Assembly: GCF_001194135.2 (NCBI RefSeq)
Contig: NC_068999.1
Coordinates: forward strand, 14,884,121-14,927,439
DNA: 43,319 nt
Direction of reading: 5' to 3'
DNA from: Octopus bimaculoides
Lineage: Eukaryota
In this document: piece after piece, positions 35,443 to 36,274 of the stretch
How positions within the stretch are numbered: position 1 is the stretch's first letter
Layout of the letters: each line of letters begins with the position of its first letter
Notes under the pieces: generated by a model
What the model saw: the letters and a program-made list of their open reading frames with translations, nothing else
Told to the model about the DNA's origin: nothing
The model's database searches: none
Made by a program: the position numbers and the translations under genes

Positions 35443-36274
35443 CACATTCCAAAGTAAATTTTAAAACAAACAACGAAATAAATTTACATATACATTTATA
35501 AATAAGTGAACAAAATTACATGTTAAAGTCATATGTGAAAACTACTCATGATGAAAGTTGTGTTCAGATATTGAATGGAGCAGTGACAAATAAAGAGATA
35601 GAAATTCAAGGTAAAGGCTTCCGAAAGGAACTGTTCGAATCGATTAAGAATTTGATGTTTATACGATATGTCGAATGAGAGTTCAAAAATAAAAAAAAAT
35701 AGAGTTAAATAGGTAGATAGATGGATAGATAATATAAATATATAGAGATTCGAATGAATTTAGGTAAAGGATATCAAATACGGCTGTTTCCGGGGTAGAA
35801 TAAATGTATAAATGGCCTTTTAGGTATTCCAAATACAGAAACATAATGCTTCCCCGCGTCAGATTGGTCTCTGTATTTGGAGTACTTAAAACACCATTTA
35901 AACATTTATGGCACCCCTGAATGATAGGCTGTAGATGATATCCTTTGCCCAAATTCACCCGAATCTGTATATATTAATGTTATCTGCCTATTTTGTTTAT
36001 CTACCTATTAACCCATGAATTTTTAAATTTTGAACACTTATCCGCTATATCGTATAAAGAACGAATTCTTAATCTATTCGGACAGTTCCTTTTGGAAGCA
36101 CTTACCTCGAATTTTTATCTCTTTATTTGTCACTCCTCCATTCGATACCTGAACCCAACAGACATGATGCATAGTTTTCACATATTACTTTTACATGTAA
36201 TTTCGTTCACTTATTTATAAATTTATATGTAAATTTATTTCGTTGTGTGTTTTAAATTATACGTTGGCATTTGC
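35443..36274. repeat. Long imperfect palindrome (foldback) with ~400-bp arms and a spacer of 24 nt or less
   Basis: 35461-35526 matches the reverse complement of 36190-36255 at 62/66; the next 94 nt inward match at about 79/94 without gaps. Pairing continues to a centre at 35843-35866. The right arm runs into the N-gap. Confidence 0.93.

What the first reader, a model, noticed from the sequence alone, without database searches (positions are those of the whole stretch)
35443..36274. At least 830-bp near-contiguous palindrome not explained by any recognised element
Seen: ~400-bp arms pair almost without gaps from the outer ends (62/66 in 35461-35526) to a spacer of 24 nt or less (35843-35866). 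The sequence is complex rather than microsatellite, has no coding signal, and the right arm disappears into a gap, so it may be longer. Established: long short-spacer palindromes are cruciform-prone and tend to be unstable. The arms have diverged (about 84% in the next 94 nt), so this one has persisted. Inference: a foldback-type transposon, an old snap-back inverted duplication, or a long-hairpin RNA locus (endo-siRNA or editing substrate). This is the most striking unexplained structure in the window.
Basis: partly seen in the sequence, partly recalled or inferred. Interest (0 to 1): 0.7.

Follow-up and report, generated by a model that had tools for sequence, protein, structure and literature searches.

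The report
Decayed palindromic repeat, probably a transposon
The roughly 0.9-kb imperfect DNA palindrome is real, but it is most likely an old, decayed copy of a hairpin-shaped, non-coding mobile element in repeat-rich animal DNA, which is an ordinary kind of feature.

Summary
Window 35443-36273 aligns to its own reverse complement over its full length (80% over 842 columns). The arms are about 410 nt, 83% identical at aligned positions, and separated by a 24-nt centre (35843-35866). The right arm ends at an assembly gap. There is no coding constraint, no tandem substructure and no Rfam family.

New evidence came from an exhaustive protein-profile search using spurious ORFs in the arms. It reached Logan contigs from other sequencing runs (species unknown) that carry the same roughly 435-nt unit. 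Its ends are sharp: the inner end sits exactly at the palindrome centre, and the outer end at window ~35407, 36 nt beyond the reported start. The one flank readable at both loci (outside the window's left arm and the second locus's full unit) is unrelated. That second locus also holds a second, inverted copy of the unit. Across 166 shared sites, the four arms form a pure star tree.

This favours a mobile palindromic element (foldback-like, long terminal inverted repeats, non-autonomous; confidence ~0.55). A one-off snap-back duplication is the main rival. Target-site duplications and copy number could not be tested. If transcribed, it would form about 400 bp of imperfect double-stranded RNA. 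It is a new member of a known kind, of low interest.

The parts
35407..35842 (+). Left arm, one complete unit of about 435 nt, read outer end to inner end.
   Evidence: Pairs with the right arm from 35443 onward. It is 77% identical to unit B' of L005/L003, with homology ending sharply at about 35407 and at the centre motif GTTTCTGTATTTGG (reverse complement of 35829-35842).
35843..35866 (.). Non-palindromic 24-nt centre (ATAATGCTTCCCCGCGTCAGATTG), more G+C-rich than the arms.
   Evidence: 24 nt lie between the innermost arm blocks and form the loop in both RNA folds. Similarity to the sequence next to unit B' in L005 is marginal: at best 15/30 over 7 offsets.
35867..36274 (-). Right arm, visible part, in inverted orientation. 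It is cut off by the contig end, and about 36 nt of its outer end should lie in the gap.
   Evidence: It is 76% identical to L005 unit B' and 84.5% identical to the partial unit A'. The last 17 columns before the gap still match the left arm 12/17 (alignment).
36275..36465 (.). Assembly gap (191 N) that hides the right terminus and its flank, and so any target-site duplication.
   Evidence: Most of the 14 gaps in the window abut microsatellites.
34920..35297 (-). Context: a dispersed SINE-like repeat copy 110 nt to the left of the palindrome. It is not part of the palindrome.
   Evidence: Other copies lie at 27651-27946, 40016-40163 and 41330-41441, at 72-80% identity. That it is an octopus-type SINE is recalled from memory and was not tested.
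36466..37320 (+). Context: a badly decayed Tc1/mariner-superfamily (DDE_3) transposase pseudogene beginning inside the gap. No link to the palindrome was shown.
   Evidence: A profile of 24 real full-length DDE_3 proteins hits the + strand collinearly. Profile positions 79-108 match at 36519-36608, 195-224 at 36825-36908, 218-249 at 36889-36984 and 276-314 at 37094-37210 (the last with i-E 1.1e-4). tblastn with P0050 gives E = 2.8e-4.

Best explanation
The palindrome is one old, decayed copy of a non-coding, non-autonomous DNA element. The whole body of the element is a pair of inverted arms of about 435 nt around a short centre, a foldback-like or long-terminal-inverted-repeat architecture of about 0.9 kb.

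Inferred mechanism: such an element moves as DNA, by a transposase made elsewhere that recognises the outer arm ends. When it inserted, its arms were nearly identical. Since then both arms have drifted neutrally to 83% identity, with indels near the centre. That divergence and the asymmetric 24-nt centre make hairpin or cruciform extrusion improbable, so the copy persists.

The element encodes nothing. If it lies in a transcribed region, the RNA would fold into about 400 bp of imperfect double-stranded RNA. Animal ADAR enzymes hyper-edit RNA of that kind.

Shown here: the structure; its neutrality; a discrete unit recurring at a second locus with an unrelated flank on the one side that could be compared, again as an inverted pair; and a star-like relationship of the four arms. 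Inferred: mobility, the way it moves, and any RNA consequence.
For: (1) The arm is a discrete repeat unit. A profile of the two arm ORFs searched against 1.84 billion proteins gave one hit, P0121 (E = 1.5e-23). P0121 is a spurious ORF on Logan contigs from four runs. L005 1342-1778 aligns to the left arm (35849-35409, 77%) and to the right arm (76%).

(2) Homology stops sharply at both unit ends. The inner end is the palindrome centre and the outer end is at about 35407. The flank beyond the outer end is unrelated: its local alignment score lies within the shuffled-sequence null.

(3) The second locus also carries an inverted partner. This is L005 1-173 (also on L007), 84.5% identical to the window's right arm, with outer ends pointing outward as in the window.

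(4) Site patterns over 166 shared sites form a pure star: 108 invariant, 51 singletons (L 12, R 5, A' 17, B' 17), and grouping sites LR|AB 1, LA|RB 0, LB|RA 0. All four arms therefore descend from one sequence whose two arms were still alike. The second pair is about twice as diverged (23.5% vs 12.9%), as expected for insertions of different ages.

(5) The general profile fits a miniature or foldback element: non-coding, 30.5% G+C, about 0.9 kb, and set among other transposon debris.

(6) Arm identity is higher in the outer half (86%) than in the inner half (74%).

(7) Approximately palindromic repeats are a known source of edited double-stranded RNA, and octopus is unusually rich in such loci (PMC5625713). 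Cephalopod genomes are dominated by DNA transposons and LINEs (PMC6962438).
Against: Only two loci are known, and the species of the second is unknown. It could be the orthologous locus of a relative, rearranged.

No target-site duplication can be read. The window's right end is in the gap, and the A' end runs off its contig.

The outer terminus (GGAAATTATTGAAGG...) matches no superfamily signature I can name, and no autonomous partner was found.

No further copy exists in the 37 kb of sequenced window, so the family is not very abundant.

At the second locus the pair is not an intact palindrome. The inner 260 nt or so of A' are missing, and 1168 nt of unrelated DNA separate the units.

The centre is at best marginally conserved between the two loci.

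The outer-versus-inner identity trend is post hoc. An 8-bin test on the same data is not significant (p = 0.27).
Confidence: 0.55

Rival explanations
1. This is a single ancient local inverted duplication. A break was followed by fold-back (snap-back) priming on a short inverted microhomology, copying about 435 nt in reverse and leaving a short loop. The Logan locus would be the same locus in a related species, later rearranged at its centre.
For: A short non-palindromic spacer is what snap-back events leave; short inverted repeats with 3-12 bp spacers can drive palindromic duplications (PMC7999016). The window holds only this copy. Contigs of the window assembly and of two Logan runs all break within 3 nt of the same position in the R / A' arm, which could reflect a shared hard-to-assemble neighbour. 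The missing inner part of A' resembles the central asymmetric deletions that stabilise palindromes.
Against: The flank outside the complete unit at the second locus is unrelated to the window's left flank, with a sharp boundary. There are no LB|RA or LA|RB sites among 166, so the duplication would have to coincide with the species split. The two pairs differ two-fold in divergence.
Confidence: 0.22
2. Two independent insertions of an ordinary, non-palindromic repeat of about 435 nt happened to land head to head, 24 nt apart.
For: The unit has discrete ends and an internal A-rich plus GATA-like tract (35685-35746). At the second locus one unit is complete while the other is a fragment 1.2 kb away.
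Against: Both sampled loci show an inverted pair with inner ends facing each other. That is very unlikely for a family with no other copy in 37 kb. Both window arms end at the same nucleotide of the unit at the centre. The star tree implies that the two arms of a pair have the same age.
Confidence: 0.08
3. This is a selected long-hairpin RNA gene, either a source of endogenous small interfering RNAs or a dedicated ADAR substrate, whose stem is maintained by selection.
For: Either strand would fold into a stem of about 400 bp. Octopus shows exceptional hyper-editing of long double-stranded RNA (PMC5625713).
Against: There is no strand asymmetry in wobble-compatible substitutions (16 vs 14) or in folding energy (-421 vs -406). 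Only 1 co-varying site was found in 166, against 51 uncompensated singletons. The arms match no protein-coding gene that could be a target (one search found only a spurious ORF). Contigs from different runs show no A-to-G excess. There is no Rfam match above threshold.
Confidence: 0.05
4. This is an assembly artefact: a chimeric join of two different copies of a repeat, or a library fold-back.
For: The scaffold is a gappy short-read draft with 14 gaps. The palindrome sits at a contig end. A probable gap-flanking duplication artefact exists elsewhere in the window (13531-13656 / 13674-13799, 99.2%).
Against: The arms differ at 17% of positions and by several indels, with a longest shared exact run of 23 nt. 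They cannot be one template read twice or collapsed by k-mers. An independent data set shows the same unit in an inverted pair.
Confidence: 0.03

Closest known systems
Foldback (FB) transposons, as first described in Drosophila (recalled from memory)
   Same: The body is essentially two long inverted arms. The central segment can be almost absent or long and unrelated, as in the window (24 nt) versus the second locus (1168 nt). It is non-coding, and copies lie at different loci.
   Different: Drosophila FB arms are built of tandem subrepeats and vary in length for that reason. No tandem substructure is present here. The FB target-site duplication could not be checked, and there is no sequence similarity to cite.
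Palindromic miniature inverted-repeat elements, for example the approximately palindromic Harbinger-derived repeat of Xenopus (PMC5625713)
   Same: It is short, A+T-rich and non-coding, can fold on itself over its whole length, and is a known source of hyper-edited double-stranded RNA without needing a neighbouring inverted copy.
   Different: At about 0.9 kb it is at or above the usual size limit. High copy number, target-site duplication and a parent transposase family are all unverified. The adjacent DDE_3 remnant shows no similarity to the arms, and its relative has terminal repeats of only about 35-45 bp.
Snap-back (fold-back priming) inverted duplications and quasipalindromes (PMC7999016)
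   Same: Two inverted arms surround a short unique spacer. Stability depends on arm identity and spacer length. At 83% identity with a 24-nt spacer, this one is on the stable side of those rules.
   Different: Those are one-off local events. Here the unit recurs elsewhere with an unrelated flank and a star-like tree.
Hairpin-RNA (hpRNA) endogenous siRNA loci of Drosophila (recalled from memory)
   Same: Inverted arms of several hundred nt that would give a long hairpin transcript.
   Different: hpRNA arms derive from, and target, protein-coding genes. These arms match no gene, and there is no sign of selection on pairing.

Membership tests
Miniature or non-autonomous inverted-repeat DNA transposon | Terminal inverted repeats | tested here: met
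   The arms of about 410-435 nt are 83% identical and cover the whole element.
Miniature or non-autonomous inverted-repeat DNA transposon | No coding capacity | tested here: met
   There are stops in all frames in both arms and no codon-position bias. Across the protein searches the only match is a spurious TGA-readthrough ORF.
Miniature or non-autonomous inverted-repeat DNA transposon | Several dispersed copies with unrelated flanks | tested here: inconclusive
   One further locus was found (L003-L007), with an unrelated flank on the one side that can be compared. Its species is unknown. There is no other copy in the window. No genome of the source species was available.
Miniature or non-autonomous inverted-repeat DNA transposon | Target-site duplication flanking both ends | not testable with these tools
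   The right end lies in the gap 36275-36465, and the A' end of the second locus runs off the contig.
Miniature or non-autonomous inverted-repeat DNA transposon | Termini shared with an autonomous, transposase-encoding partner | tested here: not met
   The only transposase remnant nearby (DDE_3, 36466-37320) shows no arm-like sequence on its 3' side. A relative (L002) has unrelated terminal repeats of about 35-45 bp. This tests one candidate partner only.
Drosophila-type Foldback element | Long inverted arms with a variable or absent central segment | tested here: met
   The centre is 24 nt in the window and 1168 nt at the second locus.
Drosophila-type Foldback element | Arms composed of tandem subrepeats | tested here: not met
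   TRF reports no array within 35443-36274, and the repeat finder reports no internal direct-repeat family of note.
Single-locus snap-back inverted duplication | Unique to one locus, with any related species sharing the flanks | tested here: inconclusive
   The flank next to the complete unit at the second locus is unrelated. This argues against the reading, but orthology cannot be excluded without knowing the species or having longer contigs.
Hairpin-RNA / endogenous siRNA locus | Small RNAs or editing mapped to both arms | not testable with these tools
   No RNA read data could be queried. Differences between contigs from different runs show no A-to-G excess.
Hairpin-RNA / endogenous siRNA locus | Pairing maintained by compensatory change | tested here: not met
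   1 co-varying site against 51 singletons in 166 shared sites. Wobble-compatible substitutions are 16 on the + strand and 14 on the - strand.

The most novel reading that the evidence does not exclude
The unit belongs to an undescribed cephalopod family of foldback-like elements. Its copies, each a self-complementary 0.9-kb hairpin, would then be a substantial source of the exceptionally abundant long double-stranded RNA and ADAR hyper-editing reported for octopus. Alternatively, this particular copy could be an expressed hairpin-RNA gene.
Probability: 0.12. Interest if true: 0.45.

Novelty: new member of a known kind. Interest (0 to 1): 0.2.

Why it matters
It matters little on its own. It is a useful worked example showing that a striking long palindrome in a draft animal genome is most economically read as a decayed hairpin-shaped repeat. 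If the family proves abundant in cephalopods, it would add one concrete element type to the explanation of why octopus transcriptomes hold so much long double-stranded RNA for ADAR to edit (PMC5625713). It also flags a place where short-read assemblies break repeatedly, so the locus should be checked in long-read assemblies before it is used for anything.

Tried and rejected
(1) A word-index protein search with seven concatenated arm ORFs found nothing. This was a false negative, because P0121 shares 10-residue words with the query and was found by the exhaustive search.

(2) The idea that the right arm is the 5' terminal repeat of the adjacent DDE_3 transposon was rejected for lack of support. 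There is no arm-like sequence 3' of the transposase, and a relative has short, unrelated terminal repeats.

(3) The idea that the palindrome interrupts that transposon's coding region was not supported. The left flank 35298-35406 gives no hit to the profile's N-terminal part.

(4) Pfam and PDB sequence searches on single-frame and stitched pseudo-translations of 36466-37458 gave nothing.

(5) Exact-pattern scans for arm 23-24-mers gave 0 hits in JGI metagenomes and in prokaryotic genomes. These are uninformative, because those collections hold no cephalopod genomes.

(6) Exact look-ups of 13 window ORFs, under genetic codes 11 and 4, found none in the protein collection. The window's own locus could therefore not be fetched from another assembly, and the gap could not be closed.

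(7) The flanking SINE copies as part of a larger palindrome: the inverted SINE at 37762-37916 has a different symmetry centre, and the SINE is dispersed.

(8) Other inverted repeats in the window are unrelated to the arms.

(9) Text searches for SINE sequence strings and for the SRR accessions found no usable paper. Neither the source organism nor the species of the second locus is established.

(10) An RNA-editing signature between contigs from different runs was looked for. The differences are mixed substitutions, not A-to-G.

(11) A low-threshold Rfam scan gave only far-sub-threshold matches to hairpin-shaped models: 26 bits against a gathering score of 103.

Full report
SETTING. The window is a gappy draft scaffold of a eukaryote. 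It has 14 runs of N, 35% G+C and many microsatellites. It has no tRNA genes, no Rfam family at gathering score and no convincing long ORF. A dispersed SINE-like repeat occurs four or five times. From memory it looks like the common octopus SINE, so I suspect a cephalopod, but text searches for its sequence found nothing. The organism is not established.

The repeat finder returns three collinear inverted blocks covering 35443-35842 and 35867-36273, with 24 nt between the innermost arms. blastn aligns 35443-36273 to its own reverse complement at 80% over 842 columns (737 bits). A global arm alignment gives 340 matches, 68 mismatches and 16 gap columns (83% of aligned bases). The RNA fold of the + strand is -420.6 kcal/mol against -157.8 +/- 6.1 for shuffles (z = -43); the - strand gives -405.9. 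The outer 254 nt pair without a single gap, and the indels sit in the inner 150 nt. The longest exact run shared by the arms is 23 nt. The arms therefore cannot be one template read twice or a k-mer collapse, and an assembly chimera is very unlikely.

THE ARMS LOOK NEUTRAL AND NON-CODING.
- Transitions and transversions number 30 and 38.
- Substitutions that would leave a G-U wobble number 16 on the + strand and 14 on the - strand (from the counts).
- CpG observed/expected is 1.08 and G+C is 30.5%.
- Arm differences fall 17/7/13 over the codon phases, and every frame has stops in both arms.
- TRF finds no tandem substructure.
- A low-threshold Rfam scan gives only far-sub-threshold hairpin-shaped matches.
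- Identity is higher in the outer half (29 non-matching columns of 212) than in the inner half (55 of 212). The best 66-column window (62/66) is exceeded in 3.4% of permutations. This trend is post hoc, and an 8-bin test is not significant (p = 0.27).

A RELATED COPY ELSEWHERE. The window itself holds no second copy of the arm. A first word-index protein search with concatenated arm ORFs found nothing. I then aligned the two homologous stop-free translations of the arms (A1) and ran the exhaustive HMMER search over 1.84 billion representatives. It returned one protein, P0121, at E = 1.5e-23.

P0121 is a spurious ORF that reads TGA as a sense codon. It lies on Logan contigs of runs SRR11869384, -385, -390 and -391. 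It served only as a handle to DNA. L003, L004 and L006 are the same locus at 99.5-99.8% identity. L005 extends that locus to 2782 bp. L007 is a 96.4% variant of the left part of L005. The result also shows that one search was a false negative.

WHAT THE SECOND LOCUS SHOWS.

(a) L005 1342-1778 (unit B') aligns to the window's left arm from the centre out to 35409 (77%) and to the right arm (76%).

(b) Both ends of the homology are sharp. The inner end is the motif GTTTCTGTATTTGG, which is exactly where both window arms end at the centre. Beyond it the flanks are unrelated: the local score of 24 compares with a null of 25 +/- 5. The unit is thus about 435 nt. The window's right arm should continue about 36 nt into the gap, and the full structure is about 900 bp.

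(c) L005 1-173 (unit A', also on L007) is the outer part of a second unit in the opposite orientation. It is 84.5% identical to the window's right arm, and its outer end points away from B', as in the window. The inner 260 nt or so of A' are absent, and 1168 nt of unrelated DNA lie between A' and B'.

(d) Over 166 sites present in all four arms, 108 are invariant and 51 are singletons (left 12, right 5, A' 17, B' 17). Only one site groups the arms by locus, and none group them across loci. Pairwise identities are: L-R 87.1%, R-A' 84.5%, R-B' 82.5%, L-A' 79.2%, L-B' 78.3% and A'-B' 76.5%. The tree is a star.

(e) Differences among the run-specific contigs are mixed substitutions and indels with no A-to-G excess. 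They are ordinary polymorphism, not editing.

INTERPRETATION. The following points are what a mobile palindromic element predicts:
- The unit is discrete and has unrelated flanks.
- It occurs as an inverted pair at both sampled loci.
- All four arms radiate from a single sequence.
- The two pairs differ in age (12.9% against 23.5% divergence).

Under that model, a master element with near-identical arms gives rise to copies that then decay. I therefore favour a foldback-like, long-terminal-inverted-repeat, non-autonomous DNA transposon, with confidence about 0.55. Mobility itself, the transposase and the target-site duplication are inferred, not shown.

The main rival is a one-off snap-back inverted duplication, with the Logan locus as its rearranged orthologue in a relative (0.22). 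In its favour are the short unique spacer (PMC7999016) and the curious fact that three independent assemblies break within 3 nt of the same position in the R / A' arm. Against it are the unrelated flank, the absence of any cross-locus grouping site, and the two-fold difference in pair divergence.

The remaining rivals rank lower. Two chance head-to-head insertions of a solo repeat (0.08) would not give a pair at both loci for a family with no other copy in 37 kb. A selected hairpin-RNA gene (0.05) has nothing in its favour beyond the fold. An artefact (0.03) is contradicted by arm divergence and by the independent data.

WHY IT PERSISTS, AND WHAT IT MAY DO. Long, highly similar inverted repeats with short or absent spacers are the ones that break chromosomes. 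Divergence and spacing reduce the risk (PMC7999016; abstract of PMC10164571). At 83% identity, with indels and a 24-nt asymmetric centre, this copy is on the safe side. That explains survival without invoking function.

If transcribed, it would form a long imperfect duplex. Porath et al. report that hyper-editing mostly targets double-stranded RNA formed by genomic repeats. They note that approximately palindromic repeats (the frog Harbinger element) are edited without a partner copy, and that octopus has an exceptionally high fraction of loci able to form long double-stranded RNA (PMC5625713). This is a plausible consequence, not a demonstrated one.

NEIGHBOURHOOD. Immediately right of the gap lies a heavily frameshifted transposase. 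I recognised it from memory and used a remembered family sequence as bait, which retrieved 5117 real proteins carrying Pfam DDE_3. A profile of 24 full-length members hits the + strand in four collinear pieces from 36519 to 37210 (best i-E 1.1e-4), and tblastn agrees.

Extrapolation puts the start codon of this transposase at about 36285-36330, inside the gap. The palindromic element therefore abuts or overlaps the transposon's 5' end if the gap size is right. I found no link between the two. There is no arm-like sequence on the 3' side of the transposase. An intact relative (L002) is a compact 1.3-kb element with terminal repeats of about 35-45 bp in a TA repeat, and these are unrelated to the arms.

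The window also holds several other inverted-repeat structures that are unrelated to this one. Structures of this kind are therefore common in this stretch of DNA.

LIMITS. No genome of the source species, no repeat library and no RNA reads could be queried. The exact-pattern scans that were possible gave 0 hits but cover no cephalopod genomes. None of 13 window ORFs is in the protein collection, so the gap could not be closed. Copy number, target-site duplication and superfamily remain open.

VERDICT. The feature is real and the description accurate, though slightly short on the left. It is best read as an old copy of an unclassified foldback-like non-autonomous element. It is a new member of a known kind, of low interest (0.2).

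Noticed in passing
window 36466-37320 (+): A badly decayed Tc1/mariner-superfamily (DDE_3) transposase pseudogene with several frameshifts and stops. Its predicted start lies inside the gap, next to the palindrome's right arm. Pfam and PDB searches on the raw frames missed it. A profile built from retrieved real proteins detects four collinear pieces.
   Followed up: yes
window 36274; L005 position 1; L007 position 1081: The window's assembly and two independent Logan run assemblies all end their contigs within 3 nt of the same position in the R / A' arm, while the partner arms read through. The cause is unknown. A microsatellite seeded at the TACACA motif, or a shared neighbouring repeat, are guesses.
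   Followed up: partly
window 10152-11407: A cluster of units of about 250-320 nt at 70-77% identity, in both direct and inverted orientation: 10152-10413, 10585-10894, 11088-11407, plus a self-inverted stretch at 10772-11074. It is another foldback-like or composite repeat, unrelated to the arms studied here.
   Followed up: partly
window 2458-2588 / 2906-3041 and 28975-29067 / 29324-29411: Two further inverted-repeat pairs (136 nt at 80% and 93 nt at 83%), with spacers of about 320 and 260 nt. They may be miniature inverted-repeat elements, and they are unrelated to the arms.
   Followed up: partly
window 13531-13656 and 13674-13799: A 126-nt direct repeat at 99.2% identity on either side of the 17-N gap (13657-13673). 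This looks like an unmerged contig overlap, that is, a scaffolding artefact.
   Followed up: no
window 34920-35297, 27651-27946, 40016-40163, 41330-41441, ~37762-37916: Copies of one SINE-like repeat at 72-80% identity with a microsatellite tail. I recall it as the abundant octopus SINE, but ARAGORN and Rfam find no tRNA-like head, and a literature string search found nothing.
   Followed up: partly
window 18188-18742 (+): The stop-free translations here resemble a mariner-type transposase from memory (for example DDRWIYHFETE...GKVIASS). Pfam and PDB sequence searches gave no hit, so this remains an untested lead.
   Followed up: partly
L003/L005/L007 (Logan contigs): The gene calls on these A+T-rich eukaryotic contigs read TGA as a sense codon ('translates to query: no'), so the 'proteins' are spurious. 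The word-index protein search missed P0121 although it shares 10-residue words with the query.
   Followed up: yes
L005 1-1093 versus L007: The same locus differs by 3.6% (25 mixed substitutions and 12 gap columns) between two runs, against about 0.5% for the adjacent part. This means either high local heterozygosity around the truncated arm or two haplotypes or paralogues.
   Followed up: partly
window 12148-12560 and 22279-23461: Long trinucleotide arrays (ATG/CAT-type) give homopolymer-like His, Ser, Ile or Met ORFs in several frames. These are simple sequence, not genes.
   Followed up: no
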